DNA of 64,000 nt from Macrostomum lignano (lineage: Eukaryota), in assembly GCA_002269645.1 (NCBI GenBank), contig NIVC01001190.1, positions 62,001-126,000 of the forward strand, in the 5' to 3' direction. This document shows, piece after piece, positions 26,337 through 59,274 of this stretch. A model generated the notes under the pieces. That model was not told where the DNA came from. It made no database searches and worked only from the letters and a program-made list of their open reading frames with translations. Numbering within the stretch: the first letter of the stretch is position 1; each line of letters opens with the position of its first letter. The position numbers and the translations under genes were made by a program.

Positions 26337-26904
26337 TGCCATTAGCTTCAAGGCTGCGTGACTCACCTGCAAAGCCGTGCATTGCTGGCAGCAATTAATA
26401 TTTGCTGCATCTCGCCAATTCTACTGGAAGGCGTTCTCCCCTTCATCGGGGATCTGGAAGGCTTCTGCTCTCCCTCTCGTGGGCCAACGCATCCCAGGCT
26501 CCATCGGCTCCCTCATCAAGGCTGACTGACACCGGGCCTGACACACACGCAGGGTCTGAGGGGATCTTTATCTCATCCCAATTTTGTCCAAGGGTTCCTT
26601 TTGCTTGTGCCTCCAATCTTTTTTCACCTAAAGTTGTTGCAGTCTTCGAGTTAGATCAACTTGTTAAACATATGCATAGCGATTATAGCAGCCTGACATA
26701 TTTATGTTCCCAATACGTGTTTGTAATGTTTGTGAACTTTGTTGTTCACGAGTTAATAAATACTTTAGAGCTCGCTTCAGCTGGACTCAATTTAATGACT
26801 GCCTCTTCCAATGATGCTAAATATGTTTAAACTGACGCGATATTTATTTATTTATTTATTTATTTTCTGTAGGACAGACCGTCTTATCTGCTGAGTGCCA
26901 ATTG

Positions 26905-27122
26905 TTTTGGGGAAGAGAGGCTGGGTGTGAAGAACCACCCAGACACGACTGTACATTGCTTTGGGGAAAAGAGTCTGGGGTGTGAAGAACCGCCCAGTCA
27001 CGAGTGTACATTGTCTTGGGGAAGAGAGTCTAGCGTGTGAGGAACCGCCCAGTCACGAGTGTACATCGTCTTGGGGAAGAGAGGCTGGGTGTGAAGAACC
27101 GCCCAGTCACTAGTGTACGTTG
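26905..27122. repeat. Short diverged copy of the 55-bp array, about 4 units
   Basis: Homologous to 13215-13990; cut off at the palindrome arm. Confidence 0.85.
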
Positions 27123-28940
27123 TTTTTGTTTTAAAACGACGTGCTCAAAAAATCAGTTTTTCCCTTTGTTATTTTCGGTCTAATTATTTATCATCACAAC
27201 GATTGACTATTAAATTGAGATATATGTGCTAGACGACTGTATGAAATACATGTAAGAATTTGTTGAGTAAGACATGCCCTAGATTGTTTCAGTTTCAGTT
27301 TCAAGTAGTTTTTCTATTATTAGTTGTAACATAATAATAATTGTTAGAGTCACCACGATTCTCAATGATAGTCAGAAAGTTTCGATGCAATTAAAAACTC
27401 TCTCGATGCTTTGCGTATAAACGAGTAATCGATTGAATCAATTGTGCACTTGACTACGTAGCACGCAGAAACTGCAGGGTTTTCAGATGTTTTGACGCAA
27501 AAAACGCAAATTATACTACTATCTGAAAATGAAGTAAGTAGTATACAAAAACGCTATCCTAAGCGTGATATGCCAATATGTAGTTGTAATAATCCATGTG
27601 CTCATATTAATTCCATGTACATTAATCCCTATCTATCTCAAAATGGATATGTACATTAATTCCATGTACATTAATCCCTATCTATCTCAAATTGGATATG
27701 TACATTATTCCCATGTACATTAATCCATATCTCAAATTGTCTATCCCCAATTCTATATGTATGCAGTATGTGCATTAATCTACAGTGTCATCCCCAGCGC
27801 GCGCGCGCGCACCAAAATTACAACTCGAAAACCTACTACAAGTACAGTTGTACAATCCCATCTAAATGAGTCAACTAATTGTGTAGCCTACAACGTAAAT
27901 GTATATTTCCAATGTACATTTCTCAGACATTTGAATAATACGGGTCGGAGTCTATATGTACATCGATAGCCTCTATACTCATATCCGCTACATACCCCAA
28001 AAATTAGGTATGTACATTTTCACCCTCGGAGAATGTAGGTTTGAATATGCTGATAATTTATTCGAAATCACTTATAAAATACACATACTTTCATATAGAG
28101 GCGGGCCTGTACAAACTCTCGCCAAGCAATGGGGTGGAGGTTGCGTCATTCAAGTCTCTCCCAAGTCTGCCCCCCAAATACAAGACTGTGTTGAAGCAGT
28201 GCTTTATATTTCTATATTGACAGTGTGGATGATACAAGACCTTTAATTGGTAATTATCAACTGCTACTGCTTTACGGTATATCCTCACCCCTCGAAGCCC
28301 CTATACTGAATGTTGAATCACCCTTTAACTCGGACCATAGTCAAATTCAACCCTGTTCGAAAACAGCCACCCCTCCGATGTTTACCAGACACAGCGCAGA
28401 CCCCATAACAAATCGAGCTAAATTTTAACACTCGCCCCTGTTTTCTCTGTCCCCCCTTCTAAATGCCAAGGAATTTCGACCCTCTCTCCATTTTCAGTGT
28501 ACAGACAGATCTTTCCACAGCACAGACCATATATTAAACTTCAAAACCCCTCTCTTCTCCGATTACGTCATCCATGCCGCCCCAGTTAGCAAGAAACCAA
28601 CTTTTAATGCACACATCAACCCCCGCGAGCAAATCCGAGTCCGCCAACCTCTACCTGCATTGACAAACCCCAGCTGCATTTGTAAATGTACACAGCCTAT
28701 GAATCAGTGTCTCCACCGCATGCAATTCTGATTTACTTGATTCTAAACTTTGTAAATAGTATAAGTCACCCTTGCGTTTACTAGAAGTAGTGAAGTCCAC
28801 AAATTTAAATACGTGAGGCTATTCAATTCTGCCTCTCCCCTGCCTTCTCACTTCAAGCGTTCAGACTTGGTCTTTGAGACGGTTTAATCTGTTAGAAGCA
28901 GGAATGAATCATGCACTGACCTCTCCACACAAAGTAAAGT
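27123..28940 (+). repeat. Left arm of a long inverted repeat (1818 bp)
   Basis: Reverse complement of 29444-31210; differs by a ~51-bp tandem unit and a few small changes. Confidence 0.95.
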
Positions 28941-29443
28941 TGGAATTTCAAACAAGAAATTAGGTTATTTTGAAAGCTAAATGACTAGAAATGCACATTT
29001 TTTTTTCATTAAAATGCAGCTTTTCACCGTTTTTTTTACGATTTTAACCTTAAAATGCAGACTTTGTTGATCAAAATCAGTAGTTTCATCACTAGAAACC
29101 ATACTTTCAACAGCTAATTTGTCCAAATATCGCTTTCAACTTGACCTTAGACAGCTTTTAAGCAGGAATGAACCCCACACAAACATCCACAAGCCAGCCC
29201 AAAATCAGCCAAAGACATGGCTATTGAAGCCTAAATTGCTAGAAATGAGCATTTTTTCATAAGAAAATACAATTTTTCACAGTTTTTACGCATTTTTTAC
29301 GTTAAAATTTTTGCAGGTTTTTTTGCATAATTTTTGCAGGTCAAGGAGCATTAATACATGAACTAACACTCCTATTTTACATTCATTGAGAGGCGGCGGC
29401 GCGGGCGGAGGCGGCAGTAGAGACAGGGACTGTGCTGCGCTGT

Positions 29444-31210
29444 ACTTTACTTTGTGTGGAGAGGTCAGTGCATGATTCATTCCTGCTTCTAACAGATTAA
29501 ACCGTCTCAAAGACCAAGTCTGAACGCTTGAAGTGAGAAGGCAGGGGAGAGGCAGAATTGAATAGCCTCACGTATTTAAATTTGTGGACTTCACTACTTC
29601 TAGTAAACGCAAGGGTGACTTATACTATTTACAAAGTTTAGAATCAAGTAAATCAGAATTGCATGCGGTGGAGACACTGATTCATAGGCTGTGTACATTT
29701 ACAAATGCAGCTGGGGTTTGTCAATGCAGGTAGAGGTTGGCGGACTCGGATTTGCTCGCGGGGGTTGATGTGTGCATTAAAAGTTGGTTTCTTGCTAACT
29801 GGGGCGGCATGGATGACGTAATCGGAGAAGAGAGGGGTTTTGAAGTTTAATATATGGTCTGTGCTGTGGAAAGATCTGTCTGTACACTGAAAATGGAGAG
29901 AGGGTCGAAATTCCTTGGCATTTAGAAGGGGGGACAGAGAAAACAGGGGCGAGTGTTAAAATTTAGCTCGATTTGTTATGGGGTCTGCGCTGTGTCTGGT
30001 AAACATCGGAGGGGTGGCTGTTTTCGAACAGGGTTGAATTTGACTATGGTCCGAGTTAAAGGGTGATTCAACATTCAGTATAGGGGCTTCGAGGGGTGAG
30101 GATATACCGTAAAGCAGTAGCAGTTGATAATTACCAATTAAAGGTCTTGTATCATCCACACTGTCAATATAGAAATATAAAGCACTGCTTCAACACAGTC
30201 TTGTATTTGGGGGGCAGACTTGGGAGAGACTTGAATGACGCAACCTCCACCCCATTGCTTGGCGAGAGTTTGTACAGGCCCGCCTCTATATGAAAGTATG
30301 TGTATTTTATAAGTGATTTCGAATAAATTATCAGCATATTCAAACCTACATTCTCCGAGGGTGAAAATGTACATACCTAATTTTTGGGGTATGTAGCGGA
30401 TATGAGTATAGAGGCTATCGATGTACATATAGACTCCGACCCGTATTATTCAAATGTCTGAGAAATGTACATTGGAAATATACATTTACGTTGTAGGCTA
30501 CACAATTAGTTGACTCATTTAGATGGGATTGTACAACTGTACTTGTAGTAGGTTTTCGAGTTGTAATTTTGGTGCGCGCGCGCGCGCTGGGGATGACACT
30601 GTAGATTAATGCACATACTGCATACATATAGAATTGGGGATAGACAATTTGAGATATGGATTAATGTACATGGGAATAATGTACATATCCAATTTGAGAT
30701 AGATAGGGATTAATGTACATGGAATTAATATGAGCACATGGATTATTACAACTACATATTGGCATATCACGCTTAGGATAGCGTTTTTGTATACTACTTA
30801 CTTCATTTTCAGATAGTAGTATAATTTGCGTTTTTTGCGTCAAAACATCTGAAAACCCTGCAGTTTCTGCGTGCTACGTAGTCAAGTGCACAATTGATTC
30901 AATCGATTACTCGTTTATACGCAAAGCATCGAGAGAGTTTTTAATTGCATCGAAACTTTCTGACTATCATTGAGAATCGTGGTGACTCTAACAATTATTA
31001 TTGTTACAACTAATAATAGAAAAACTACTTGAAACTGAAACTGAAACAATCTAGGGCATGTCTTACTCAACAAATTCTTACATGTATTTCATACAGTCGT
31101 CTAGCACATATATCTCAATTTAATAGTCAATCGTTGTGATGATAAATAATTAGACCGAAAATAACAAAGGGAAAAACTGATTTTTTGAGCCCGTCGTTTT
31201 AAAACAAAAA
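29444..31210 (-). repeat. Right arm of a long inverted repeat (1767 bp)
   Basis: Mirror ORFs in the six-frame track; ends checked by eye (tttttgttttaaaacgac / gtcgttttaaaacaaaaa). Confidence 0.95.
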
Positions 31211-39440: not shown

Positions 39441-40526
39441 TTATCATTTAAAAATGAGCGACAGGAAATGATGGCTAAGACTATTGTTGCTTTGCATTTT
39501 TTTACTTTACCTGCAGTTAACTATAAAACTGAATGGACAAAACTACGCTCGTGTATTGATGGGGAAGCGCACAGCCTCACCCTACTCACATAGCTTATGA
39601 GTATCAATATCATAGACCAAATTGTACTTTTCTGTTTATAAAGTACAGGCCGAACCTAAGCTAATTGCATATGAAATTCAAACAGCGCAACAGAGACAGT
39701 TTTGACAAACAAAAAGTAAACAAACAAACAAATCAACAAAAACAAAGAAACAGACAAAATCGAAAACGAATGAAAATAAAAAAATAGGTTAATTCGCGAC
39801 AGTTGACGGCATAGCTAATAAGAGTTGGGGATTTGACGCAATTATTGGAGAAGACAAGCTGCAGCAGAGAGACTTAATCAGTTTTTTTACGATGAACAAG
39901 ACCGATAGAAATGAAACATGGGTTCGGTAGCAACAGAAACTGACGCATAAACACACAAATTTTATAAATGCCAAATCGCGTAAACACAAACGGCAGGTTA
40001 ATATATGAAAATACCAATAGTAGTATAGTAGAGAAAATGTCGACAATCGCAAAATAGTTCAGCATGTACTTTTGTTGCGTACATTAAAAGTTAAAAAGTC
40101 AATTATTACATAACTATAACTTTAAATGTTATCTGGGTGCGCCCAGCTGGATGGCCCAGTAATTTTACAATTGATGAGGAACTACGCAATCCTACGCCGG
40201 AAGATCACGTTGGAAACCTGTTTCGTTAATTGACCGAAGAAGAAGAAGCTGGCCTACATCATGTGGAGCAAGAAAGTAAACGGAAGTCGACAGTTAAGCA
40301 AACTGAATTGCATATTCGCAAACTAAAAGTTTCTACGCGCGGAGAATTTACCTGACCACATCGAGAATATGCCAGTGAGGTATCTCAACTCCTATCTACG
40401 CCTGTTCTTCGTTCAGTTTAACTTTAATCAATCAAACTAAGGTCAGAAGGTATACCGCGTGAGAAATCGAGACTTGTCAATGGACTATTTATCTAATGTT
40501 TATCTCATGTTACATAATAATAATTG

Positions 40527-43500
40527 TTAGAGGACATAAAAGAGTTCGTGCCGCTTATAACTGTTCTTATCGTCGTCTGGTACGCTGGGATAGCCGCTGA
40601 CCAAACAGCCGGGATTGCCAATGTATACTGTGTTGTACACCTTCCACATCATGTCGCGCACCTTTCTAGCCGGATGGAATAGGCCAGCCAGGCAGTACTG
40701 CAGCACCCGGGTGTGGCCCAGGCTGACCCGGCAGCCTTCAACAACAGACATGAATGCTTGCACAACGTGCGGCGATGTTTCAAACACGTTTGGCCAGGCA
40801 AAATTAAGCAGGTGAGTGAGCGCGTCCTCGCAGCCGAAACCGTACACACTCAGAGCCATGTGGCTGATGGTGAACATGGCCGTCTGCCTGTGCACGAGGT
40901 CCCTGTCCATCAGGGCGTCCTCCAGCAGAAGGACCACCGCGTAAACGTAGTCCTTGCCCATCTCGCCGATGTATTCAAACATGAATGAAAGCGATTTCAG
41001 TACACCGTTTTGAACGTTAAGCTCAGGTACGCGGTACTCGTTCATTAGGCCAGGCAATACGGTAAACGGCGAGCAGTTCTCAGCGACAATAGCGATGGCC
41101 ACTGTTGTGCAGACACGGTTCTGGCGTTCTTGCACCTGCGGATGGGTTGGATAGAGGTTGAAACAGCGATTCTTTGATTCTGTTTTAAGACGAGATTTAA
41201 AGATGGCGATTCTCAACTACTCAGAAAAAAGCCTTTTAGGACCATATTTTATCAACTTACTACTTATTGAGTAGCTAGAAGACAACAAAAAACGGTGATA
41301 CTCCAAGAAAATAAAACTTTATGGTATGATTTAACATATATTAGCTACAGGAATTGAGTAGTCGTAGGCCTCGAGCTACATAATATTCAAGTACAAAGTG
41401 TATCGTTAAGCAAGCAATATCGGCCTCACCTTGAGATTATTGAGCAGAGTTGCCAGCACATCATGCGGACCAATAGCTTTGGCAATGTAGCCGAACGTGT
41501 TAACTGTGGCCCGTCTGATACTCTTCTTGTGCGCCTTGAGCAATTCGAGCAGCTCGAAGCAGATGCGCATCCACTCCTTGACGCTGACGAACTCGGAGCC
41601 GCGGTCGGCGATGCGGCCAACCAGGTCGATGCAGTTCTCCTGCACTTTCTCGTGCCGGTTCTTTAGAATAGGCGTCAGCCTAGGAAGCAGATCTTTGATT
41701 GGCGGCGTCATCTTGTTCATCCCGATGACATTCACGATGGCTTTCAATGCGCCTAGAATCGAGCCTAGGACTTCCGGGTACTCCTCGCCGAGGTACTCGT
41801 ACAGCACAACGCCAAGATGGCCCATCAAGCGCTCCTCCTGGCAGGCTTTCATAACGCCAGCTATGCGGCTAATGAGATCGGCCACCTGTTGGCGCACTTT
41901 GGCCGACTTGTTGTTCAGGCGCCAGAGAATGTTGCCGCAGATCTGGGGCAGGTAGGGCTTCACCCGCTTGCCCAGAGCGTTCACCAGGGTGCCGAAGCCG
42001 TTCAGCATCACAGCGTCCTCGTTTGTCTGCTCCGAGAAGGCGAACATTACGCCATCGATTAGCTGTTCTTCGAGACGCGAGTCAACCTCAGTGGCACCCA
42101 GATTGTTGAGCACCTTCTCAACCGTATCCATGACCATTTTGCGATACTGCTCAGATGGCTCTTTGAGATCGTCCACAATTCGATTGAGAATCTCTGCAGA
42201 ACCAACTTTGTTGGCAATCTCGACTGTGGTGTCCACCAATTGGCGGTAGTTCCGCCTGTCCGACGCCATCTTCTGTGTCCAGAAGTGCTTGAAAAATGAC
42301 GGCAAAATGTCTTTTTTGATGTAAGCCGGCTCAACACCCTCGGTGGAGCAGCACTGTTTCACTACTTTGAGCACAATTTTCTTCATCTCTTCGTCAGGCG
42401 ACTGGAACTCGCGGATTAAGATGAGCATAACCTCGCGAGTATAATAATTGGCGTACTCAGCGTCCATTAAGGGAATGAGGTAGCCAATGGCTTTGAGAAA
42501 AGCGGCCAGACCTTTGCCTCGGTGGGTACGGATGCCTTTCCATAGCGGTTTGAGCACGGTATCAAACGACTCAATGCCGTAGGGCGTGGCGGACTCGGCC
42601 AGAGCTGCCAGAGCCAGAGCGGTGATAGTTCGCACCTTCTGCTGCTCGTCAACCAGGCCCAGTTCGATAATTTCAACTAGAGAGCGCAGATGCGGCAGCA
42701 CAGCGCAGCCCATCAGGATGGCAATCTGTTGCACTATTTTGATACCAGTGTGCCTGGCCTGCCAGCTGCGCTTCGACTTGCACACGGCCTTAAGAAACAA
42801 TAGCAGACTGGGAATGCCTAGCGCTGAGGCCACCACAGCGAAAGCTCTGGCCGTGGTGTTACGCACGTATTCGTCCATGTTCTCCAGATCCGGACGCATT
42901 GTGGTGATCATGGTTGCCAGGCCGGCCGCCTTGGCCAGGTTAGAAATAATCTCGCGGCCTTCTACACGAGCATAATAGTCTTCATCAATGAGCAGCGGCT
43001 CAATCACTACCAGGATTTTGTGGACGAACGGCCGCACCAAATCGTCCAGCTTGTAGAGTACCCGGTCAATCACCTTCACAAGCAGGTGGCGCTCCTGATC
43101 CTCCAGTGTCGGCGACATCAACAGCGGCAGGATCTGATTGAAGAGCGGGCCGGCACCGAACTCTCTGGCCTTCTCGGTGATCTGGCGGAGCGCGGACTTG
43201 CGCATCGGTGGCGTGCCGTTTTTGATTTTAACAGCAGAGTCATAATGCGACGCTCCCGCAGCTCATCGGCCGACAGGCTGTCCTCGTCAACATCGGTGAG
43301 CAGCTTGTCGAAGTACTGCATATCGTCGGGCTTCAGCATTGGCAGATTGGTGCCTTTAGGCTGCATATCCGACAAGGCTGTGCCTGTCGACGTCCGAACA
43401 TCCGGCGTGGCCATCTTGAAGCCGCCGGGCGTCGCCAGCGGAGTCGGCGTTGCAGTCAAACGACGCGGCGTTCGCAGCGGCACATAGCCGGCCGGCGGAG

Positions 43501-44136
43501 CCAGTACCTTGTAGCCTTCGGGCAGCATGGCGTCCAGGTCTTCATCAGACAGCGGCCGGTTGCGGTCATCCAGCTCCTTCGCCGCCATGACCCCGGAGCA
43601 GATGCAGATATTATCCGCGCAGGTTGCAACTGCTGCACTGGGCGTGGCCATCTTCATTGCCTTCACGCCCATCGGAGTCACCCCGCTCGGGGTCATGACC
43701 CCGCCAGGTGTAAAACCGCTCGGCGTGGCCGACGCCGGCGTTGCGACGCTCGGCGTTGCGTCGGCGACATTTGACGGCGTCTCGTCCCAACGCGAGCGCC
43801 GCTTGCCAGCCTGCGGCGTCTCCTGAATCAGGTCGGCGGCGGTCCGGTCCGCGCGCGGCGTCTCGCCCCAGCCACCGGGAGTCGCTTCGTCCCATCGATT
43901 TCGCCGGCCCATCGGTGTTGTAGCCGACGGCGTGGCGTCGAAGTGGCCCGGCGTTTCACCCCGAGTTGACATATGTACGGGCGTCTCCGCCCACTGCCGA
44001 TTGTTAATTAGCCCCGGTGCCGGCGTGGCGTCGCCACCGCTGATGCGGCCGGGCGTCTCCACCCACTGGCGCACGCTGGCTGACGGGGTGGCGGCGCCGC
44101 TGGCCGATGGGGTGCTGGCATCACCTCGAAGCCGGT
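40527..44136 (-). CDS. SF3B1: Splicing factor 3B subunit 1, 3' exons 44136-41430 and 41135-40527; 1-nt frameshift at ~43226; 5' exons not seen
   Basis: RWDETP ULM motifs; [15 protein letters not shown]; HEAT repeats ([28 protein letters not shown]); LK|VQERQNR phase-0 intron 41136-41429; C-terminal RHELFYVL*. Confidence 0.97.
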
Positions 44137-44219
44137 CTGGAAGAATTACATGTTAGCATTTATGTCATTTATCTGACATGAGCTTAATATCTTATGATCA
44201 AACTTTAGTGTAAAAAGTG

Positions 44220-44480
44220 CCACCTAGCAACCAGTCCAGGCACCTAGAAACCAATCCCTGAACACCTAGCAACGACCTCAGACACCTAACAACCAAACCT
44301 ATAAACACCCTAGTAACCACCAATCCTATAAACACCCTAGCAACCACCGCAGGCACCTAACAACTAAACCCAGAAACTAGGGGTCGGACGGGATCCCGAT
44401 CCCGATCCCAGAAACATGGGATCCCGAGGGGTTGTCGGGATCCCAATCCCGATGATGATACATATCGGGATCATTGGGAT
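44220..44480. repeat. ~20-bp CACCTAGCAACC degenerate repeats followed by a hAT-like end (TAGGGGTCGGACGGGATCCCG with GGGATCCC subterminal repeats)
   Basis: Read directly; no partner TIR found. Confidence 0.45.
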
Positions 44481-45695: not shown

Positions 45696-48504
45696 TTATA
45701 CCAAAAATATATTTTTTAAATGCTTATAATATGGTATACTAGAATTAGAAATAGAAATTTTTAATATAGGCCCTACAAGTATTTTACTAGGCCTAGCACT
45801 AGCAGTAGCACTAATATAAATAACAAAAACTTTTTATAGCCTAAAGTAGCTACTTAGCTATATGAGCTATATGTCCATATAATATATAATACTTGATTAG
45901 ACCTAGGCCTAGTCCTGCCTTTACATGGCTACAATAAAAACCTAAAAACCTAAGACTAGTCATAGGCCTAGCATATGCTATATATAGGCCTAGGGCTAGG
46001 CTCTATAGTATAAATTTCAACCAAGATAGCAAGAAGCCCAGATATAGATTAAAAAGAACTTATCAACTTATCTAGTCATTAATAACCTATAATAGCCTAT
46101 CCTAGCCTTTTAAATAAAGATAATATATCCCTGTCATTCTAAAGTAGACCAGAAAAGGTCAATTGGCCAATATACTATACAGTGCAATTCAATTCCAACA
46201 ATAAAATAGGCCTAGTTGCTTGATATCAAAACTAGCTTTTTGAGCTAGGCCTATTAGTCAATTAGTCTAGTTGTATTTAAGCCTAGTAAAGATTAACTAC
46301 TGGCTTGTTAGTGGTTAACAATAATGAAATGGCTTTGTATTAAACTGTAACGACTCGTGTACTTAACCTTACCCTATCCTAAAACTATATAGTCCAGGCC
46401 CCTAGCTCATTTTAAATTGACGGCAATTTTATTAGCCAATTAAATATTAGTTGGCTTTAGTAGGCCTTGTGAACATGATCTTTGAACACAGAACTTGTTC
46501 GCAACATGCTTAAAGGCAATCAGCGATCATGTTCAATTTGGCTTTATAAAGCTGCGTATCCTGTCAACACGGGTGTTAATTCTTTAAAAAAATGTATTAA
46601 ATACAACGTAAAATAAAGCCAGAAATACATGCAGCGCTACACCGTGTTTTCCGAGGATAGAATGGCCTCACGAGTGGGACACGGCTGAGTTAATACATAA
46701 AAAATTTAACAAAAATTTAACGATTTTTAAAAAATTTAACTAGTTAATTAACTAGTTAAACAAATAACTAGTTAACGCCCAGCACTGACTATATTCATTA
46801 TGATGACAATATCTGAATAGCAATAGCCTAGGTGCTAGGCCTAGGCCTATATTAGGTCTATATGCAATTATGACATTGTCCATATTTAATTCATTAATAA
46901 ACTATATCTTAAACAGACCCACATATTATTCTCTCCTTAATAGAAATAAAGGTTTCTCTTCTATTAAGCAAATCGACTGCAAAAGATTAACTAGGTGTCT
47001 TTGTCTAGGCCTATATGATGCTCAACAATCCAAAGGCAAAATCCTCTCAAGAATCCTTAGTCAGCCAGCCAATTAATTGTCCTAGAATAAGCGCATTTAA
47101 ATTAGCGCTTTATTCCCAGCCCTATGTAAAAGTACCATATATGTTCCGCATTGAAAGCGGTAAACTACCCGTAAAGCTACGACTATACGCGTAGGCTGTG
47201 GCTTTGTAAGCCACGATGCGCACGTAGTTTACCGCTTTATCGTTGTGACACGGGTGATACTAAAAATGAACCTCGTTAGTTGACCGACTTTTCGCAAATT
47301 CATACTGTTAACGATTTTTCACAAACTAAGGCAACAGGGATGATTCTTTTCAATAAAAATAATAATTTCTCATTTAATGTAACTGTTTTTTGCGCTAACT
47401 CTTTTGAATTTCAAAGTTTATAGGAGAAAAAATGAATTATTGATGAGTGTGTCTTTTCCGGAATACGAAAAAAACCTTTACGAAAAAAACAGAAAACTAA
47501 ATTTAAAAAACCGGGCTTAACCTTTTCAAGAAAGTAAAAGTAAAACAAAATTAGTTAAAATGAACTAGTTCTCTACAGTTTAGTAAAAAGATTTTCAGTT
47601 TTAACACATCGGTTGATCAAATATTAAAATTTTGCAAGCTTTTAATATTAGTTGTAGTTTGTAATTTCTATTTTGGCGTATTTTTGTATGCGATAAAAAG
47701 TTCGTTGGCGTACATTGGCGTGCATGAGCTACGGAAGCAATTTTCGTTCCGGCGTACAGCGGTACACGATCGTGACCATGGTAGTATAGGGCCTAATTCT
47801 ATCTAGCCTATGATAGAACTCTATAGCTTTAAGGACTTAATTTTAATGTAGGCCTATTAAGTTTTTAATCCATTTTACACAAAATTGACTATTTGATTTG
47901 ATATCAAACCTATTTTTTATTTAAGCCCTAGGCCTAGCCAAAATAAATCATTGCTAAATAGAATTGAAATTTAAAATTAAATATACTAGCCTACCAAAAT
48001 TTATATATACCAAGTTATATATAGTGCTAGGCCTAGGGCTAAAGAAAAGTTTAACCCTAATAATACTATTTATTATACTAATGAATTAGTGAGTAAACTT
48101 GAAGCCTACCTACTAGGCCTAGGCCTAATATAAATAATTAAGCATATAAGCAAATATTAGAGATTTAGTATATTTGGTTTGGATTAATATATTCTAATTA
48201 GGTCTATATTTGATTCAAAATAGCTAAGCCTACCTAAGCTTTAGCCTAGGCTAAAGATAAAAGCATTAATTTAGCCTTTTTATTGGATTAAAATATGTTT
48301 AGTTAGCATGCTTTGGTGTAACCCTTTTTTCATCTTTCTATATCCTCTTTTCTTATTCTCTTATCCTTGTTATCCTTATACTCTTTTCTACCCTTTTTAC
48401 CCTCCCCTCACCTTTTGATCCTATCCTCTTCAACCTATCTCTACCCTCTTCTACTAGGTTCTACCCTTGTTTATAGCTTTACATTTATTTGTGGCTTCAT
48501 TCTC

Positions 48505-49500
48505 TTAGCCCTAGCCCCAGCTTAGCCCTAGCTTGAGATCAAGCCCCAGCTCAAGCTCTAGCCACACCACAGCCCTAGCAGCCAGCTCTAGCTTAAGCTC
48601 AAGCACTAGCCCAGCCCCAGCACTATCCCACTCTATCCCAGCCCCTAATCTAGCCCTAACCTTAGCCCTAGCCCTAGTTCCTCCCCTAGCCCTGGCCTTA
48701 GCCTTAGTGCTTGTTATCCCTGCCCCAGCTCTGGCCCTATCACTATCCTGCCCCAGCCCTAGCCCCAGCCCTAGAACCAGCCCTAGCCCCAGCCCTAGCC
48801 CCAGCCTTTGCCCTTGCCCTAGCCTTAGCCCAAGCCCAAGCCCCAGACTTAGCCCCAGCCCCAGCCTTTGCCCTAGCCCAAGCCCTTGCCCTAGCCTTAG
48901 CCCAAGCCCAAGCCCTAGCCCTAGCCCTTGCCCTAGCCTTAGCCCAAGCCCAAGCCCCAGCCTTAGCCCCAGCCCCAGCCTTTGCCCTAGCCTTAGCCCA
49001 AGCCCTTGCCCTAGCCTTAGCCCAAGCCCAAGCCCTAGCCCTAGCCTAGCCCTTGCCCCTGCCCTAGCCCCTGCCCTAGCCCTAGCCCCAGCCCTTGCCC
49101 TAGCCTTAGCCCAAGCCTTAGCCCAAGCCCTAGCCCTTGCCCGAGCCCTTGCCCTAGCCTTAGCCTAAGCCCTTGCCCCTGCCCCTGCCCCTGCATCTGC
49201 CCTAGCCCCAGCCCCTGCCCTTGCCCTAGCCCTAGCCCTAGCCCCAGCCCCTGCCCTTGCCCTAGCCCTAGCCCCAGCCCTACCCCACCCAAGCCCTACC
49301 CCACCCCAGCGTCAGCCCTACCCCACCCCATCGCCAGCCCTACCCCACCCTAGCGCCAGCCCTACCCCACTCCAGCCCCAGCCCTACCCCACTCCAGCCC
49401 CAGCCCTACCCCACCCCAGTGCCAGCCCTACCCCATCTCAGCGCCAGCCCTACCCCATCTCAGCGCCAGCCCTACCCCATCCCAGTCTTGGCCCTAGACC
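48505..49500. repeat. Degenerate C-rich hexamer array (GCCCTA/GCCCCA/GCCTTA/GCCCAA)n; G-rich mirrors at 57600-58560 and 63420-64000
   Basis: Read directly. Confidence 0.92.
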
Positions 49501-51099
49501 CCCAGATCTGGCCCTTTCACTATCCTAGCCCTAACCCCAGCAGAATTCTACTTCTTTAACTCCTGCACCCCTGCACTCCCTACACCCCGTGCACTCCACA
49601 TGTGCTGTTTGTATTTTTATGAATACTTTTTTTGTTGCTTTAATCATTAATTCCTCCCAGGCAGTCCTTCTAGGCTATCTTTCCTAGGCAGCCCCCAGGC
49701 AAACCTTTCAAGGCAGCTTTCCCAGGCAAACCCTCCCAGACAGCCCCCCTACCCTCCTCTACTTTTCTATCCTCTCCTTACTCTTCTCTACCCTTTATCC
49801 TCCTACTCTCCTCTACTATCCTACACACCTCTATCCTTCTCTACCCTCTACCCCTTCTCTACCCTCTTCTACCAGCTCCTCCCCTCCTCTGCAGCTATAC
49901 CCTTGTCTATGGCTTTACCCTCCGTTGCCAGCCTCACCCCCTACTCTCCTCTACCAGCTCCTACCCTTCTCTGCCCTTCTACCATTTCCTACCCTCCTAC
50001 CTTCTACTCTCCCCTGCCCTGCTCTACCCTTCGACACTTTCCCTTCTCTCTTCTACCAGCTCCTACCCTCCTCTACCAACTATTACCCTCCTAGCCTCCG
50101 CCATCAGCTCCTACCCTCCTATAACAGGAGGAATAACAGGATAATGAACCTAGATTAGATTCTATCTACTATACTAGGTTAGTAGCCTATCCTACCTACT
50201 AGGCTAGTAAATATAATACCTATCATTCTACCGTCTAGACTTATAGGTGCTAATCTACTTTATAGTCTGTTAGGCTTCGCGGGTCAACCTGCCAGTCTTC
50301 TAGGTACTAATCCACTCTATCTACCTGACTAGTAGTTGCTAAACAACTCTGTACCCTACAAGGCTAGTAGTCCTAATATACCTATCTACGAGCTCGTACT
50401 AGGCAAGTTGTGCTAAACTGCCCTACCTTATATGCTAATAGTTGCTCAAATATTCCTTTTAGAAGCTTCTGAGTAGTTGAAGTCAGTTTGCTTAAGGTCT
50501 TTCACTCTCCCTTTTTCTCTTTGCTATTCTCCCCTAGCCTTGATATTCTTCTCCTTACCCATCCTTGCTATTCTCTTACCTTCCTTCTATTCCTGTTTTT
50601 TCTTTTATATTCCCTGCTGAACTTCCCCTCCTCCTCTATCCTTTTCATTCCCTTCCTCCTCTATCCTTGTTGCTATTTCCCTTCTCCATTCTCCTTGTCC
50701 CCCATTCTCCTTGCTATTCCTCTTTGCTTTGCTCCTTTTTCTCCCCTTCAGACCCAGCCCTTTCCTCCCCTTCAGACCTGACCCTCTCCTCCATTCAGTA
50801 CCCACCCTCTCCTCCCCTTCAGATTCCACCCTCTCCTCCCCTACAGATCCCACCCTCTCTTCCCCTTCAAACCCTCTTCTCCCCTTTAGACCCCAGCCTC
50901 TTCTCCCCTTCAGACCCCCCCCCTTTTCTTCTTTCCAGCCTCACCTCGTAGCTCTGCTAATTAAACTTTAACTATTCTTTTCAGAAGTGAAGAAGAATTT
51001 ATCTCCTTCCTCTTTTCAGAATATCCTCGCATCGGTCTTGTGGTCATTCTACGTGCCGTAGCGACTGGTCGCAGCAACCATAACTCTCTACCGCCGCCG

Positions 51100-51760
51100 T
51101 AATGGCACCTGACGTACTGTCCAACCTGTTCAACACGACCTCAGGGTGCTGCAGAGCGACACACTTGCGGCCTACCTTTTCGTTTTGGTGCTCGATGGGG
51201 TGCTACGGAGGGCCCTGCCAACATATGAGGACGGCTTCCTACTGTGGCTGCAAACAAACAGCCGCCATCTGGAGTCGGCGTAACCCAGGAGCTGTTTGCC
51301 TCTACGGCTGAGGGAGCCCAGCGCATGCTAGACAGCCTGGTGGCAGCTGCGGCATCGGTCGGGCTAGCGGTGAACATCGAGAAGAGGCAGGTGATGTGTA
51401 CCTGCGGAGCTGCCTATCAAAATCACCTGCTGGGACGCCTGACGATCGTGCATTGGCTCTACCTCGCTGCACGCGCTTCACGTACCTCGGCAGTCTTGTG
51501 CCCAGTGTCCAGGAGGACTTGGCGCGACGCAGGGGCCTGGCCTGGGTTGCCTTCCGCTCTATCCGAGTTGTCCTGTAGGACGCCGCGCTGCCAGACTGCT
51601 GCGACGACCTAGCGAGACCCTCCGCAGGCAAAGACTTCAACTGGCGGGCCACACCATTCGGCGGAGGCTTACTGTTCTCAACCAGTGCAGGACGTCCTGC
51701 TACTCACGATGCAGGGCCCCTGGCCCCGAGGCTACGGCCGGGCGAGCCGCTACGCGGATT
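51100..51760 (+). mobile_element. RTE-clade RT fragment in copy A (also at 55340-56000 minus and 61160-61815 minus)
   Basis: TTSGVLQSDTLAAYLFVLVLDGVL; AQRMLDSLVAAAASVGLAVNIEK; FTYLGSLVPSVQEDLARRRGLAWVAFRS. Related to 14725-15230. Confidence 0.8.
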
Positions 51761-52933
51761 GCTTGCTAGATGACGCTGGGGTGATCGGCTAGGAATTCTG
51801 TTGCCGCCTTCAGAGAGCTCGCACCGAGAAAACTGATCTGACACCGCCTCCATTGTGAACTGTACTCTGTTGAGTCCCCGGCGGTTTGCCTTGTTGTTGT
51901 CTCTTCAGAATAATTTGCCCAGCTGCGAACTGTGATGGTGCATATCGCGTACTCGCGATTCAAAAGTTTATGCTTCTTACTGTTTCACTGATCTAATTCC
52001 AAACCTACCACGCAAACTATTTACTTTTAATTCCGTGTGCTTTTCTTGTGTTTTACTTTTTACCGTTTGGTGTCAATGCTATTTATTGCGTGTAATATTG
52101 TCGCAAAATTAAACTTCGGATGTCAATATTTAGCTACTGCCGCTGTTCTGCATTACAAATACTTCCGCATGTACTGACGTAACATTGCGCCAATAATTTT
52201 ACATTGCGTGGCGTCGAAACCAATCTGCTGTTGAATGCTACTAGCGTAGCTAATGGCCGTTTGAATCTCTTGAAATACATTGAAATGTCATGCTGTAGTA
52301 TTGCTGTTGAAGATCTAAACGAGACTAGCCATACTCCCTACTGATCCATATGCTTCTCAAGCAAGGTATACGGAAAGCAGAATGAGCAGCAAACTTAGTA
52401 TTTGATCTTTGGATCCCTTATAGAACCAAGGGAAGGGATCTAGTCTAGATCTAACATTTAAATAAAAATTCTTGATATAATGGAATGCAATAAATGCCTA
52501 CCGGAGTAATTTTTTAACTTCCACTTTCCCCGAGTTTGACCACTTTCTCTGCTACAGGCTTAAGCTAAACCAACGCAAAATACGAGCCTGAATAAAAAAC
52601 TACTCACTCCACAACCTTAACCTTAATATTTCTTTCTGCCACTGCTGTGTCTTGCAATACTCAAAAATCCTGTGACTTCGCTTCACAGATATTGCTTGAG
52701 AAACATATGCCGTCCCATTTGAATTGGCGCAAGTCTCTTTTACATCGTCAAAAGCAATATGTCTGGTGCCAATTATATTTGTGCCGATCAAACTTCCTAG
52801 AGAATGATTTGTTGATAACTACATGTCCCTGTCTTGAAGCTTGCACGCTGTCTTTAACCATTATTTTGTCGGTGTACAACGTGGAACCGATCAGACAAGT
52901 TGGTCGTAAATTCCCTAAAATCCTGGATAGGGG

Positions 52934-54497: not shown

Positions 54498-57400
54498 GTT
54501 TTTTATTCAGGCTCGTATTTTGCGTTGGTTTAGCTTAAGCCTGTAGCAGAGAAAGTGGTCAAACTCGGGGAAAGTGGAAGTTAAAAAATTACTCCGGTAG
54601 GCATTTATTGCATTCCATTATATCAAGAATTTTTATTTAAATGTTAGATCTAGACTAGATCCCTTCCCTTGGTTCTATAAGGGATCCAAAGATCAAATAC
54701 TAAGTTTGCTGCTCATTCTGCTTTCCGTATACCTTGCTTGAGAAGCATATGGATCAGTAGGGAGTATGGCTAGTCTCGTTTAGATCTTCAACAGCAATAC
54801 TACAGCATGACATTTCAATGTATTTCAAGAGATTCAAACGGCCATTAGCTACGCTAGTAGCATTCAACAGCAGATTGGTTTCGACGCCACGCAATGTAAA
54901 ATTATTGGCGCAATGTTACGTCAGTACATGCGGAAGTATTTGTAATGCAGAACAGCGGCAGTAGCTAAATATTGACATCCGAAGTTTAATTTTGCGACAA
55001 TATTACACGCAATAAATAGCATTGACACCAAACGGTAAAAAGTAAAACACAAGAAAAGCACACGGAATTAAAAGTAAATAGTTTGCGTGGTAGGTTTGGA
55101 ATTAGATCAGTGAAACAGTAAGAAGCATAAACTTTTGAATCGCGAGTACGCGATATGCACCATCACAGTTCGCAGCTGGGCAAATTATTCTGAAGAGACA
55201 ACAACAAGGCAAACCGCCGGGGACTCAACAGAGTACAGTTCACAATGGAGGCGGTGTCAGATCAGTTTTCTCGGTGCGAGCTCTCTGAAGGCGGCAACAG
55301 AATTCCTAGCCGATCACCCCAGCGTCATCTAGCAAGCAATCCGCGTAGCGGCTCGCCCGGCCGTAGCCTCGGGGCCAGGGGCCCTGCATCGTGAGTAGCA
55401 GGACGTCCTGCACTGGTTGAGAACAGTAAGCCTCCGCCGAATGGTGTGGCCCGCCAGTTGAAGTCTTTGCCTGCGGAGGGTCTCGCTAGGTCGTCGCAGC
55501 AGTCTGGCAGCGCGGCGTCCTACAGGACAACTCGGATAGAGCGGAAGGCAACCCAGGCCAGGCCCCTGCGTCGCGCCAAGTCCTCCTGGACACTGGGCAC
55601 AAGACTGCCGAGGTACGTGAAGCGCGTGCAGCGAGGTAGAGCCAATGCACGATCGTCAGGCGTCCCAGCAGGTGATTTTGATAGGCAGCTCCGCAGGTAC
55701 ACATCACCTGCCTCTTCTCGATGTTCACCGCTAGCCCGACCGATGCCGCAGCTGCCACCAGGCTGTCTAGCATGCGCTGGGCTCCCTCAGCCGTAGAGGC
55801 AAACAGCTCCTGGGTTACGCCGACTCCAGATGGCGGCTGTTTGTTTGCAGCCACAGTAGGAAGCCGTCCTCATATGTTGGCAGGGCCCTCCGTAGCACCC
55901 CATCGAGCACCAAAACGAAAAGGTAGGCCGCAAGTGTGTCGCTCTGCAGCACCCTGAGGTCGTGTTGAACAGGTTGGACAGTACGTCAGGTGCCATTACG
56001 GCGGCGGTAGAGAGTTATGGTTGCTGCGACCAGTCGCTACGGCACGTAGAATGACCACAAGACCGATGCGAGGACATTCTGAAAAGAGGAAGGAGATAAA
56101 TTCTTCTTCACTTCTGAAAAGAATAGTTAAAGTTTAATTAGCAGAGCTACGAGGTGAGGCTGGAAAGAAGAAAAGGGGGGTCTGAAGGGGAGAAGAGGCT
56201 GGGGTCTAAAGGGGAGAAGAGGGTTTGAAGGGGAAGAGAGGGTGGGATCTGTAGGGGAGGAGAGGGTGGAATCTGAAGGGGAGGAGAGGGTGGGTACTGA
56301 ATGGAGGAGAGGGTCAGGTCTGAAGGGGAGGAAAGGGCTGGGTCTGAAGGGGAGAAAAAGGAGCAAAGCAAAGAGGAATAGCAAGGAGAATGGGGGACAA
56401 GGAGAATGGAGAAGGGAAATGGCAACAAGGATAGAGGAGGAAGGGAATGAAAAGGATAGAGGAGGAGGGGAAGTTCAGCAGGGAATATAAAAGAAAAAAC
56501 AGGAATAGAAGGAAGGTAAGAGAATAGCAAGGATGGGTAAGGAGAAGAATATCAAGGCTAGGGGAGAATAGCAAAGAGAAAAAGGGAGAGTGAAAGACCT
56601 TAAGCAAACTGACTTCAACTACTCAGAAGCTTCTAAAAGGAATATTTGAGCAACTATTAGCATATAAGGTAGGGCAGTTTAGCACAACTTGCCTAGTACG
56701 AGCTCGTAGATAGGTATATTAGGACTACTAGCCTTGTAGGGTACAGAGTTGTTTAGCAACTACTAGTCAGGTAGATAGAGTGGATTAGTACCTAGAAGAC
56801 TGGCAGGTTGACCCGCGAAGCCTAACAGACTATAAAGTAGATTAGCACCTATAAGTCTAGACGGTAGAATGATAGGTATTATATTTACTAGCCTAGTAGG
56901 TAGGATAGGCTACTAACCTAGTATAGTAGATAGAATCTAATCTAGGTTCATTATCCTGTTATTCCTCCTGTTATAGGAGGGTAGGAGCTGATGGCGGAGG
57001 CTAGGAGGGTAATAGTTGGTAGAGGAGGGTAGGAGCTGGTAGAAGAGAGAAGGGAAAGTGTCGAAGGGTAGAGCAGGGCAGGGGAGAGTAGAAGGTAGGA
57101 GGGTAGGAAATGGTAGAAGGGCAGAGAAGGGTAGGAGCTGGTAGAGGAGAGTAGGGGGTGAGGCTGGCAACGGAGGGTAAAGCCATAGACAAGGGTATAG
57201 CTGCAGAGGAGGGGAGGAGCTGGTAGAAGAGGGTAGAGAAGGGGTAGAGGGTAGAGAAGGATAGAGGTGTGTAGGATAGTAGAGGAGAGTAGGAGGATAA
57301 AGGGTAGAGAAGAGTAAGGAGAGGATAGAAAAGTAGAGGAGGGTAGGGGGGCTGTCTGGGAGGGTTTGCCTGGGAAAGCTGCCTTGAAAGGTTTGCCTGG

Positions 57401-59274
57401 GGGCTGCCTAGGAAAGATAGCCTAGAAGGACTGCCTGGGAGGAATTAATGATTAAAGCAACAAAAAAAGTATTCATAAAAATACAAACAGCACATGTGGA
57501 GTGCACGGGGTGTAGGGAGTGCAGGGGTGCAGGAGTTAAAGAAGTAGAATTCTGCTGGGGTTAGGGCTAGGATAGTGAAAGGGCCAGATCTGGGGGTCTA
57601 GGGCCAAGACTGGGATGGGGTAGGGCTGGCGCTGAGATGGGGTAGGGCTGGCACTGGGGTGGGGTAGGGCTGGGGCTGGAGTGGGGTAGGGCTGGGGCTG
57701 GAGTGGGGTAGGGCTGGCGCTAGGGTGGGGTAGGGCTGGCGATGGGGTGGGGTAGGGCTGACGCTGGGGTGGGGTAGGGCTTGGGTGGGGTAGGGCTGGG
57801 GCTAGGGCTAGGGCAAGGGCAAGGGCAGGGGCTGGGGCTAGGGCAGATGCAGGGGCAGGGGCAGGGGCTTAGGCTAAGGCTAGGGCAAGGGCTCGGGCAA
57901 GGGCTAGGGCTTGGGCTAAGGCTAGGGCTAGGGCTAAGGCTAGGGCAAGGGCTGGGGCAGGGGCAAGGGCTAGGCTAGGGCTAGGGCTTGGGCTTGGGCT
58001 TGGGCTAAGGCTAGGGCAAGGGCTTGGGCTAGGGCTAGGGCAAAGGCTGGGGCTGGGGCTAAGGCTGGGGCTTGGGCTTGGGCTAAGGCTAGGGCAAGGG
58101 CTAGGGCTAGGGCTTGGGCTTGGGCTTGGGCTAAGGCTAGGGCAAGGGCTTGGGCTAGGGCAAAGGCTGGGGCTGGGGCTAAGGCTGGGGCTTGGGCTCG
58201 GGCTAAGGCTAGGGCAAGGGCAAAGGCTGGGGCTAGGGCTGGGGCTAGGGCTGGTTCTAGGGCTGGGGCTAGGGCTGGGGCTAGGGCTGGGGCTAGGGCA
58301 AGGGCTAGGGCTGGGGCAGGATAGTGATAGGGCCAGAGCTGGGGCAGGGATAACAAGCACTAAGGCTAAGGCCAGGGCTAGGGGAGGAACTAAGGCTAGG
58401 GCTAAGGTTAGGGCTAGATTAGGGGCTGGGATAGAGTGGGATAGTGCTGGGGCTGGGCTAGTGCTTGAGCTTAAGCTAGAGCTGGCTGCTAGGGCTGTGG
58501 TGTGGCTAGAGCTTGAGCTGGGGCTTGATCTCAAGCTAGGGCTAAGCTGGGGCTAGGGCTAAGAGAATGAAGCCACAAATAAATGTAAAGCTATAAACAA
58601 GGGTAGAACCTAGTAGAAGAGGGTAGAGATAGGTTGAAGAGGATAGGATCAAAAGGTGAGGGGAGGGTAAAAAGGGTAGAAAAGAGTATAAGGATAGAAG
58701 ATAGAGAATAAGAAAAGAGGATATAGAAAGATGAAAAAAGGGTTACACCAAAGCATGCTAACTAAACATATTTTAATCCAATAAAAAGGCTAAATTAATG
58801 CTTTTATCTTTAGCCTAGGCTAAAGCTTAGGTAGGCTTAGCTATTTTGAATCAAATATAGACCTAATTAGAATATATTAATCCAAACCAAATATACTAAA
58901 TCTCTAATATTTGCTTGTAAGCTTAATTATTTATATTAGGCCTAGTAGGTAGGCTTCAAGTTTACTCACTAATTCATTAGTATAATAAATAGTATTATTA
59001 GGGTTCAACTTTTCTTTAGCCCTAGGCCTAGCACTATATATAACTTGGTATATATAAATTTTGGTAGGCTAGTATATTTAATTTTAAATTTCAATTCTAT
59101 TTAGCAATGATTTATTTTGGCTAGGCCTAGGGCTTAAATTAAATAGGTTTGATATCAAATCAAATAGTCAATTTTGTGTAAAATGGATTAAAAACTTAAT
59201 AGGCCTACATTAAAATTAAGTCCTTAAAGCTATAGAATTCTATCCTAGGCTAGATAGAATTAGGCCTTATACTA
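54498..59274 (-). repeat. Copy B (inverted) of the 4.8-kb unit
   Basis: Mirror ORFs; ends checked by eye. Confidence 0.95.

What the first reader, a model, noticed from the sequence alone, without database searches (positions are those of the whole stretch)
43581..43627. 47-nt in-frame micro-inversion inside the SF3B1 p14-binding segment
Seen: the sense strand reads [32 protein letters not shown]. The opposite strand of these 47 nt reads [15 protein letters not shown], and flipping them gives [32 protein letters not shown] in frame. Both orientations are stop-free; the ends share only a GC microhomology, and a quasi-palindrome (GCAGGTTGCAACTGC) sits at one end. Established: MTPEQ(L)Q..EIDERNRP lies in the SF3B6/p14-contacting region of SF3B1 (about human residues 373-415). 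The flip does not restore the AWRW consensus, so the event may be more complex. Inference: a template-switch inversion that would alter branch-point machinery, or an assembly error.
Basis: partly seen in the sequence, partly recalled or inferred. Interest (0 to 1): 0.7.

Follow-up and report, generated by a model that had tools for sequence, protein, structure and literature searches.

The report
Micro-inversion in a spare SF3B1 copy
A 41-base stretch really is flipped inside an SF3B1-like gene of the flatworm Macrostomum lignano, but the flip sits in a truncated, frameshifted extra copy, while other copies in the same genome have the normal orientation, so it is an ordinary small mutation in a redundant gene fragment.

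Summary
The inverted coding segment is real in the sequence, but its limits need correcting. It is a 41-nt in-place inversion at 43581-43621, or equally 43 nt at 43580-43622 with complementary C/G ends, not 47 nt.

The window is Macrostomum lignano contig NIVC01001190.1 (Mlig_3_7 assembly). Four other contigs carry SF3B1 in the normal orientation (…[29 protein letters not shown]), and two of them give full-length 1217-aa models. Flipping the 41 nt matches them at 40 of 41 bases and restores the conserved 20-residue MTPEQ…DDRNR spacing.

The same inversion occurs in a second Mlig_3_7 contig that is about 1% different. It also occurs in two protein models that are not from the Mlig_3_7 annotation and probably derive from the older ML2 assembly. 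An assembler artefact is therefore unlikely.

The copy that carries it is a 3.87-kb, non-syntenic partial duplicate. It lacks the first ~105 codons, and both contigs share two 1-nt deletions. The two contigs differ by four amino-acid changes, two of them at motif positions that orthologues conserve, against two synonymous changes.

Best reading: a genuine micro-inversion, made by a replication template switch or a two-break rejoining, in a decaying spare copy. It has no effect on the working spliceosome. Interest is low.

The parts
43581..43621 (-). Inverted 41-nt segment. It is equivalently 43580-43622, because the flanking C and G are complementary. The sense strand now reads [13 protein letters not shown] in place of [10 protein letters not shown](F/L)SAQ.
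   Evidence: Best in-place inversion in the exhaustive scan; 40 of 41 bases match the type-A paralogues after reverse-complementing. PF08920 score rises by 16 bits on flipping.
43624..43624 (-). Substitution 2 nt outside the left (sense) junction: GCC in type A, ACC here (Ala to Thr). It completes the 8-nt palindrome GTTGCAAC.
   Evidence: It may be a templated by-product of the same event (inference) or an independent change.
43613..43613 (-). Single difference inside the inverted segment (TTC in type A, TTA here, read in the ancestral orientation).
41430..44136 (-). Main exon of the type-B SF3B1 copy: TP-repeat region, SF3b1 domain and most HEAT repeats. A CTAAC branch-point-like motif and the acceptor ttccag lie just upstream.
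   Evidence: alignment to the M. lignano SF3B1 proteins.
40527..41135 (-). Last exon, including the stop codon; a 294-nt intron (41136-41429) precedes it. Together with 41430-43205 it forms the annotated 794-aa CDS PAA70994.1 (BOX15_Mlig011473g1).
   Evidence: 100% identity to P0241.
44123..44124 (-). 1-nt deletion relative to type A (GAGGCGGATGCC becomes GAGGT-GATGCC), plus an adjacent C-to-T change. It shifts the frame 13 nt into the exon and is shared with the second type-B contig.
43229..43231 (-). Second shared 1-nt deletion (TTGAAGATC becomes TT-AAAATC). It separates the N-terminal reading frame from the HEAT-domain ORF, which is why the annotated CDS starts at Met 43205.
40508..44377 (-). 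Full extent of homology between this type-B copy and the type-A SF3B1 loci (3.87 kb, ~95-96% identity). It starts inside a 44-nt intronic tandem repeat and ends ~20 nt after the stop codon.
   Evidence: The upstream exons (first ~105 codons) are absent from the window and from L004.

Best explanation
This is a genuine 41-43-nt in-place micro-inversion in one of the extra SF3B1 copies of the neopolyploid flatworm Macrostomum lignano.

The carrier ('type B') is a 3.87-kb DNA-level partial duplicate of SF3B1 that sits in a repeat-rich, non-syntenic location. It lacks the first three coding exons and carries frameshifts. It evolved under constraint for most of its divergence from the working copies and now appears to be decaying.

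The inversion most likely arose in one step. Either the nascent strand switched to the opposite-strand template and back during replication, or two breaks were rejoined; either way only 1 nt of complementarity was used at each junction. It replaced the MTPEQ motif and the residues that follow it ([14 protein letters not shown]) with antisense-encoded residues. The neighbouring G-to-A change may be part of the same event.

The type-A contigs keep the normal orientation, and two of them give full-length 1217-aa models, so the change has no consequence for branch-point recognition.

Shown: the inversion, its limits, its presence in several assembled copies, and the truncation and frameshifts. Inferred: the mutational mechanism and the non-functional status.
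For: - Identity of the window: M. lignano contig NIVC01001190.1. Its 794-aa model P0241 matches at 100%.
- Ancestral orientation: four type-A contigs (L001, L002, L003, L005) read GCCGCCGCCATGACCCCGGAGCAG[A/C]TGCAG[A/C]TATTCTCCGCGCAG, i.e. AAAMTPEQ(M/L)Q(I/L)FSAQ. All 183 motif-bearing orthologues have MTP(E/D)Q in the sense orientation with a fixed 20-residue span.
- Limits: the 41-nt flip reduces mismatches from 38 to 7 in 150 nt and raises the PF08920 score by 16 bits.
- Reproducibility: the same inversion is in contig NIVC01001580.1 (L004), which differs from the window by ~1% over 10-12 kb. It is also in UniProt models P0248 and P0249, which come from outside the Mlig_3_7 annotation. Mlig_3_7 was polished with Pilon using Illumina reads.
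- Defective carrier: homology to type A is limited to 44377-40508. Exons 1-3 are absent. There are two shared 1-nt deletions, plus a third in L004.
- Relaxed constraint: between the two type-B contigs there are 4 nonsynonymous changes against 2 synonymous ones. They include P-to-L in AVxPLLEDAL and G-to-V in [10 protein letters not shown].
- Redundancy: models of 1217 aa (P0244, P0246) and 1171 aa (P0242) come from type-A contigs. The genome is known to hold duplicated subgenomes.
Against: - No raw reads or RNA-seq could be examined. The two published assemblies share one PacBio data set, so they are not fully independent.
- The type-B models P0248 and P0249 read through both frameshift sites (TGFEVDASTP; [14 protein letters not shown]). 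Either the 1-nt deletions are polymorphic among type-B copies, or they are errors in one assembly.
- dN/dS between type B and type A is only ~0.11. The 794-codon HEAT ORF carries no frameshift or stop, whereas all six indel or inversion lesions lie in the first ~960 nt. That pattern is not expected of a long-dead pseudogene.
- A transcript-derived gene model is annotated on this locus.
- There are no flanking inverted repeats. This differs from the published human-chimpanzee micro-inversions and leaves the mechanism open.
Confidence: 0.66

Rival explanations
1. Functional variant paralogue. The two shared 1-nt deletions are errors of the Mlig_3_7 consensus or are limited to some haplotypes. 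At least one type-B copy then encodes a ~1105-aa SF3B1-like protein whose MTPEQ segment (the one the reader places in the SF3B6/p14-contacting region) is replaced by the antisense-encoded [13 protein letters not shown]. It could be expressed through spliced-leader trans-splicing at the exon acceptor.
For: P0249 (1105 aa) and P0248, from outside the Mlig_3_7 annotation, are type B. They contain the inverted segment and read through both frameshift sites. dN/dS against type A is ~0.11. A good acceptor and a CTAAC branch-point-like motif precede the exon. Trans-splicing is common in this species.
Against: Both Pilon-polished Mlig_3_7 type-B contigs share the two deletions, and L004 has a third. 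Exons 1-3 and any recognisable promoter context are missing. The near-invariant MTPEQ motif is destroyed. Private changes hit conserved HEAT-repeat motif positions. P0248 also skips a stretch just upstream of the inversion. ML2, the assembly these models probably derive from, was rated only 32% error-free by REAPR.
Confidence: 0.14
2. HEAT-only product. The locus is kept because it expresses the annotated 794-aa protein (Met at 43205 to the stop at 40527), i.e. an SF3B1 HEAT domain without the N-terminal region. The inversion and the frameshifts then lie in a decaying leader and are neutral.
For: All six lesions (three 1-nt deletions, the inversion, two in-frame deletions) fall in the first ~960 nt and none in the 2.4-kb HEAT ORF. 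If placement were uniform, the chance that the four disruptive ones all fall there is ~0.007 (my arithmetic). The annotated CDS is transcript-derived. dN/dS in HEAT codons 320-929 is ~0.04.
Against: The two type-B contigs differ by 4 nonsynonymous against 2 synonymous changes in the last exon, two of them at motif positions that orthologues conserve. Type B is identical to the type-A contig L002 over codons 654-993, so gene conversion can mimic constraint. The TP-repeat region is intrinsically indel-prone, and both in-frame deletions lie between short direct repeats. Reads from type A could multi-map and explain the transcript model.
Confidence: 0.12
3. Assembly or polishing artefact. The genome contains only the MTPEQ orientation, and the inversion was created by consensus calling or by Pilon local reassembly.
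For: The assembly is a draft built from noisy PacBio CLR reads and has other oddities, for example a perfect 1,286-nt palindrome at 27655-30729. Both assemblies used the same PacBio reads. No independent short-read contigs for this species were found in the protein database.
Against: The identical inversion is present in two contigs that differ at many other sites. It is also in two protein models from outside the Mlig_3_7 annotation. It is tightly linked to about 40 type-B-specific substitutions. No known long-read error mode yields a precise 41-nt in-place reverse complement at high coverage (my own knowledge).
Confidence: 0.06

Closest known systems
Micro-inversions between closely related genomes (59 human-chimpanzee cases of 17-33 nt; Potapova, Kondrashov and Mirkin 2022, PMC8755829)
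   Same: Precise in-place reverse complement of a few tens of bases, with the length conserved and the inverted copy almost exact (40 of 41).
   Different: This one is longer (41-43 nt). It lacks the perfect or near-perfect flanking inverted repeats reported for all 'definite' cases in that paper; here only one complementary C…G pair flanks the segment. It also lies inside a coding exon of a duplicated gene fragment.
Short template-switch mutations, four-point model (Löytynoja and Goldman 2017, PMC5453318)
   Same: The model includes a case that inverts a fragment only and predicts clustered apparent substitutions in a linear alignment. The raw alignment here shows 38 mismatches in 150 nt that collapse to 7 after one flip. 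The adjacent G-to-A change completes a palindrome (GTTGCAAC), as in classic quasi-palindrome correction.
   Different: The mechanism is inferred from the product only. A two-break rejoining would give the same sequence. No pre-existing quasi-palindrome spans the breakpoints.
SF3B1 (SF3b155) MTPEQ…RNRP segment, N-terminal to the HEAT repeats
   Same: The affected residues are the MTPEQ…D(E/D)RNR motif, conserved with fixed 20-residue spacing in 183 retrieved orthologues and inside Pfam SF3b1 PF08920.
   Different: Intact M. lignano copies already deviate from the AYRWE/AWRWE consensus (IFSAQ). The inverted version lies in a truncated, frameshifted copy and not in the working gene.
Redundant gene copies and fragments in the M. 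lignano DV1 genome (Wudarski et al. 2017, PMC5730564; Zadesenets et al. 2023, PMC10733133)
   Same: Mlig_3_7 holds 180 Mb of non-repetitive blocks that are at least 95% identical, and three subgenomes are described. SF3B1 appears on six contigs.
   Different: Type B is not a syntenic homeologue. Its homology to the other copies stops abruptly inside an intron and 20 nt after the stop codon.

Membership tests
SF3B1 gene family | SF3b1 domain (PF08920) followed by the C-terminal HEAT-repeat array, with high identity to SF3B1 orthologues | tested here: met
   PF08920 scores 125.5 bits against a cut-off of 25.1. The conceptual translation is 97% identical to M. lignano SF3B1 and 75-78% identical to other metazoan SF3B1 over 1104 aa.
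SF3B1 gene family | Complete, uninterrupted coding sequence including the N-terminal exons | tested here: not met
   Exons for the first ~105 codons are absent from the window and from L004. There are two 1-nt deletions at 44123 and 43230. The annotated CDS is only 794 aa.
SF3B1 gene family | Conserved MTPEQ-x15-RNR motif in the sense orientation | tested here: not met
   The sense strand reads [24 protein letters not shown], and the motif is encoded on the opposite strand.
In-place micro-inversion | The segment equals the reverse complement of the ancestral sequence at the same position, with no net length change | tested here: met
   40 of 41 bases match. The replaced and replacing stretches are the same length. 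This is the best of all possible in-place inversions.
In-place micro-inversion | The ancestral state is established by an outgroup or paralogues | tested here: met
   Four paralogous contigs and 183 orthologous proteins have the sense orientation.
In-place micro-inversion | Flanking perfect or near-perfect inverted repeats (as in Potapova et al. 2022) | tested here: not met
   Only one complementary C/G pair flanks the segment. No inverted repeat of 7 nt or more brackets it in type A or type B.
Template-switch mutation (four-point model) | A cluster of apparent substitutions and indels is explained by one reverse-complement copy of nearby sequence | tested here: met
   Mismatches fall from 38 to 7 in 150 nt. 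A linear MAFFT alignment instead invents two 9-nt indels.
Template-switch mutation (four-point model) | Origin during replication rather than by break and rejoining | not testable with these tools
   Only the product sequence is available.
Processed pseudogene (retrocopy) | Loss of introns, a poly(A) remnant and target-site duplications | tested here: not met
   The 294-nt intron and ~240 nt of the upstream intron are retained, and there is no A-run at the 3' boundary.
Assembly artefact | The feature is absent from independent assemblies or contigs of the same genome | tested here: not met
   It is present in a second Mlig_3_7 contig (L004) and in models P0248 and P0249 from outside the Mlig_3_7 annotation. 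Read-level support was not testable.

The most novel reading that the evidence does not exclude
The type-B locus is not dead. It is retained as a transcribed, possibly trans-spliced SF3B1 derivative. This would be either a HEAT-only 794-aa protein or, in haplotypes without the frameshifts, a ~1105-aa protein whose MTPEQ segment was swapped for antisense-encoded residues by a single micro-inversion. Either product could act as a competitor or variant subunit of the U2 snRNP in a neopolyploid animal.
Probability: 0.15. Interest if true: 0.55.

Novelty: new member of a known kind. Interest (0 to 1): 0.22.

Why it matters
It matters little for splicing biology, because the animal keeps SF3B1 copies with the normal orientation and full-length reading frames.

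It is useful in three smaller ways:
- It is a clean, well-polarised example of a 41-nt coding micro-inversion without flanking inverted repeats. That bears on the debate between template switching and break-induced replication.
- It is a warning for annotation. A linear alignment turns this single event into two 9-nt indels and about 30 substitutions, and one database model skips the corresponding stretch altogether.
- It illustrates how spare gene fragments decay in the highly redundant M. lignano genome.

Tried and rejected
Rejected: the flip leaves 35 ungapped mismatches and gives a lower Pfam score than the 41-nt flip.
- A 'more complex event' to explain the missing AWRW. Rejected: intact M. 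lignano copies read IFSAQ at that place.
- Recombination between inverted repeats, or a hairpin at the site. No inverted repeat of 7 nt or more brackets the segment, and the DNA folds are no better than shuffled sequence (z = +1.9 and +0.4).
- Retrocopy origin. Rejected because the introns are retained.
- Whole-genome-duplication homeologue. Doubtful, because homology ends abruptly at both ends of a 3.87-kb block.
- Looking for the N-terminal exons in the 20 kb upstream. None found.
- Looking for independent short-read or transcript evidence in the protein collection. A 334-aa query and a 120-aa query returned no Macrostomum fragments. P0249 has no contig on record. The ML2 paper is not held in the library.
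- 'Stop-free in both orientations' as a sign of selection. Rejected: 66% of random 41-nt inversions stay open.

Full report
**1. The observation**

The gene lies on the minus strand. Around 43581-43627 the sense strand reads …[39 protein letters not shown]…, and the + strand reads [15 protein letters not shown].

An alignment with fifteen SF3B1 fragments from other animals shows the consensus …[32 protein letters not shown]… at this place.

**2. Whose genome this is, and the other copies**

A search with the full conceptual translation (1104 aa) gave Macrostomum lignano proteins at 97% and 87% identity. All other animals scored 75-78%.

The 90%-identity cluster of the top hit holds 11 M. lignano proteins from six contigs of assembly GCA_002269645.1 (Mlig_3_7), plus UniProt-only models. 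The window is contig NIVC01001190.1. The fetched locus L006 is identical to window 53205-30527, and the annotated 794-aa protein PAA70994.1 (P0241) is 100% identical to the window's translation.

The proteins fall into two types.
- Type A (P0121, P0242, P0244, P0245, P0246, P0247, P0250) reads …[21 protein letters not shown](M/L)Q(I/L)[13 protein letters not shown]….
- Type B (the window, P0248, P0249) reads …[37 protein letters not shown]…. It also shares a set of linked markers: [14 protein letters not shown], no ETPG insert, PLATPGG, ALSDMQ, EKAREFG and ISHMALS.

So the intact gene of this species lacks the AYRWE/AWRWE motif. Across 183 retrieved orthologues that have the motif, the span from M of MTP(E/D)Q to RN(R/K) is always 20 residues. 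The M. lignano type-A version ([20 protein letters not shown]) fits that spacing.

**3. Exact anatomy from DNA**

I fetched the DNA of the four type-A contigs: L001 and L005 ('A1', CTGCAGCTA), and L002 and L003 ('A2', ATGCAGATA). I also fetched a second type-B contig, L004 = NIVC01001580.1.
- Type A2 reads GTTGCAGCC|GCCGCCATGACCCCGGAGCAGATGCAGATATTCTCCGCGCA|GAAGGAG.
- Type B reads GTTGCAACC|TGCGCGGATAATATCTGCATCTGCTCCGGGGTCATGGCGGC|GAAGGAG.

I scanned every possible in-place inversion of a 150-nt neighbourhood. The best is 41 nt, window 43581-43621. It is equivalent to 43 nt at 43580-43622, because the flanking C and G are complementary. It cuts mismatches to A2 (contig L002) from 38 to 7.

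Of the 7 remaining mismatches, five are ordinary A/B differences outside the segment. One lies inside it (43613). One lies 2 nt outside the left junction (43624, GCC to ACC).

After the 41-nt flip the protein reads …[29 protein letters not shown]…, which restores the canonical spacing. The Pfam SF3b1 score is 125.5 bits as is, 141.6 with the 41-nt flip and 137.4 with the 47-nt flip.

No inverted repeat of 7 nt or more brackets the segment in either type. The local DNA folds are no more stable than shuffled sequence. About 66% of all 41-nt inversions in this CDS would remain stop-free, so that property carries no weight.

**4. Real or artefact?**

The identical inversion is in L004. L004 is collinear with the window for more than 12 kb, at 99.1% identity over the longest 10.2-kb aligned block with 23 gap openings. 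It differs from the window at eight positions in the gene region.

The inversion is also in P0248 and P0249. These are UniProt-only models, not part of the Mlig_3_7 (BOX15) annotation. They most probably come from the WormBase ParaSite annotation of the older 1040-Mb ML2 assembly (the link to ML2 is my inference).

Mlig_3_7 was assembled with Canu from the same PacBio reads as ML2 and was polished with Pilon using Illumina and RNA-seq reads. The feature is therefore reproducible across contigs, assemblers and polishing. It has not been confirmed with independent reads, which I could not reach. I rate an artefact at about 6%.

**5. What kind of copy carries it**

- **Extent.** Homology between type B and every type-A locus is confined to window 44377-40508 (3.87 kb, ~95-96% identity). 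It begins inside a 44-nt tandem repeat of the intron upstream of the main exon and ends ~20 nt after the stop codon.
- **Missing exons.** In type A, the three upstream coding exons (about 105 codons) lie within 1-2 kb. They are absent from the 20 kb upstream in the window and from L004.
- **Not a retrocopy.** Introns are retained, so type B is a DNA-level partial duplicate.
- **Indels.** Both type-B contigs share 1-nt deletions at 44123 and 43230 and in-frame deletions of 9 and 12 nt. L004 has a further 1-nt deletion at 44015.
- **Reading frames.** In this assembly the frame that runs through the inverted segment is cut off from the natural exon phase upstream and from the HEAT ORF downstream. 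That is why the annotated CDS begins at Met 43205.
- **Conflict between models.** P0249 and P0248 read through both frameshift sites. Those deletions are therefore either polymorphic among type-B haplotypes or wrong in one of the assemblies.

**6. Selection**

Type B against type A gives dS ≈ 0.055 and dN/dS ≈ 0.11. A1 against A2 gives dS of 0.01-0.024. Type B was therefore constrained, or was homogenised by gene conversion, for most of its history. It is identical to L002 over codons 654-993.

The two type-B contigs differ by 2 synonymous and 4 nonsynonymous changes, all in the last exon. Two of them hit motif positions that orthologues conserve: P-to-L in AVxPLLEDAL and G-to-V in [10 protein letters not shown]. 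This points to recently relaxed constraint.

All indel and inversion lesions lie in the first ~960 nt, and none lies in the 2.4-kb HEAT ORF. This leaves room for a HEAT-only product. It can also be explained by gene conversion and by the indel-prone TP-repeat sequence.

**7. Mechanism**

The product is an exact in-place reverse complement with 1 nt of complementarity at each end and no flanking inverted repeats. Two origins fit:
- an inter-strand template switch and return, which is the 'inversion of a fragment only' case of the four-point model;
- two breaks 41-43 nt apart that were rejoined in the opposite orientation.

The published set of human-chimpanzee micro-inversions (17-33 nt) was always flanked by inverted repeats, and its authors favoured microhomology-mediated break-induced replication. 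This case does not share that feature.

The G-to-A change beside the junction could have been templated by a brief switch at the TGCA palindrome, which would copy 'AC', before the main switch. That is inference only.

**8. Verdict**

This is a real but ordinary micro-inversion in a truncated, probably decaying spare copy of SF3B1 in a highly redundant neopolyploid genome. The working SF3B1 copies are unaffected. The proposed effect on the branch-point machinery is not supported.

Noticed in passing
window 27655-28940 and 29444-30729: Perfect (100%) 1,286-nt inverted repeat with a spacer of about 503 nt. It is either a very young foldback element or a long-read palindrome artefact inside the contig.
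   Followed up: no
window 7718-13437 and 21281-27126; ORFs 16044-16985 and 17016-17894: Direct repeat of about 5.7 kb (85-98% identity) around ORFs that hit PNMA-like gag (PF14893) and, just below Pfam's cut-offs, aspartyl-protease families. This looks like an LTR-retrotransposon remnant or a nested duplication. (TCTA)n arrays sit at 12057-12313 and 25882-26002.
   Followed up: partly
window 47782-52600 vs 59274-54498; 54796-58149 vs 60614-63996: A 4.8-kb inverted duplication (97%) and a 3.4-kb direct duplication (98.8%) lie upstream of the SF3B1 fragment. They are full of CTAGCC hexamer arrays and 22-nt repeats, which explains the extreme GC skew there.
   Followed up: no
window 44123 and 43230; L004 at the position matching 44015: Both shared 1-nt deletions in the type-B copy come with an adjacent substitution (GCGG to GTG; TTGAAG to TT-AAA). 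The type-B protein models P0248 and P0249 read through both sites. This is unresolved: it could be real polymorphism or consensus error.
   Followed up: partly
window 42200-41000 (codons 654-993) vs L002: The type-B copy has no private differences here and shares about nine variants with type-A contig L002 against L001 and L003. This suggests gene conversion between paralogues, or a chimeric consensus.
   Followed up: partly
window 41064-40435 vs L004: All seven substitutions between the two type-B contigs in the gene region lie in the last ~630 nt. There are none in the ~2.9 kb of the main exon, although the contigs differ by ~1% overall. This may reflect homogenisation of the main exon by conversion or by polishing with multi-mapped reads.
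   Followed up: no
L005 (NIVC01000974.1) 7029-7268 and 7748-7839: This type-A contig has the normal orientation but shows frame breaks in an upstream exon and in the main exon, and it ends in the middle of the gene at the contig end. Its model P0245 is a 133-aa fragment.
   Followed up: no
tool behaviour: the search for homologous proteins returned only proteins between about 0.6 and 1.75 times the query length. The first search (334 aa) therefore missed the full-length M. lignano proteins that the 1104-aa query found.
   Followed up: yes
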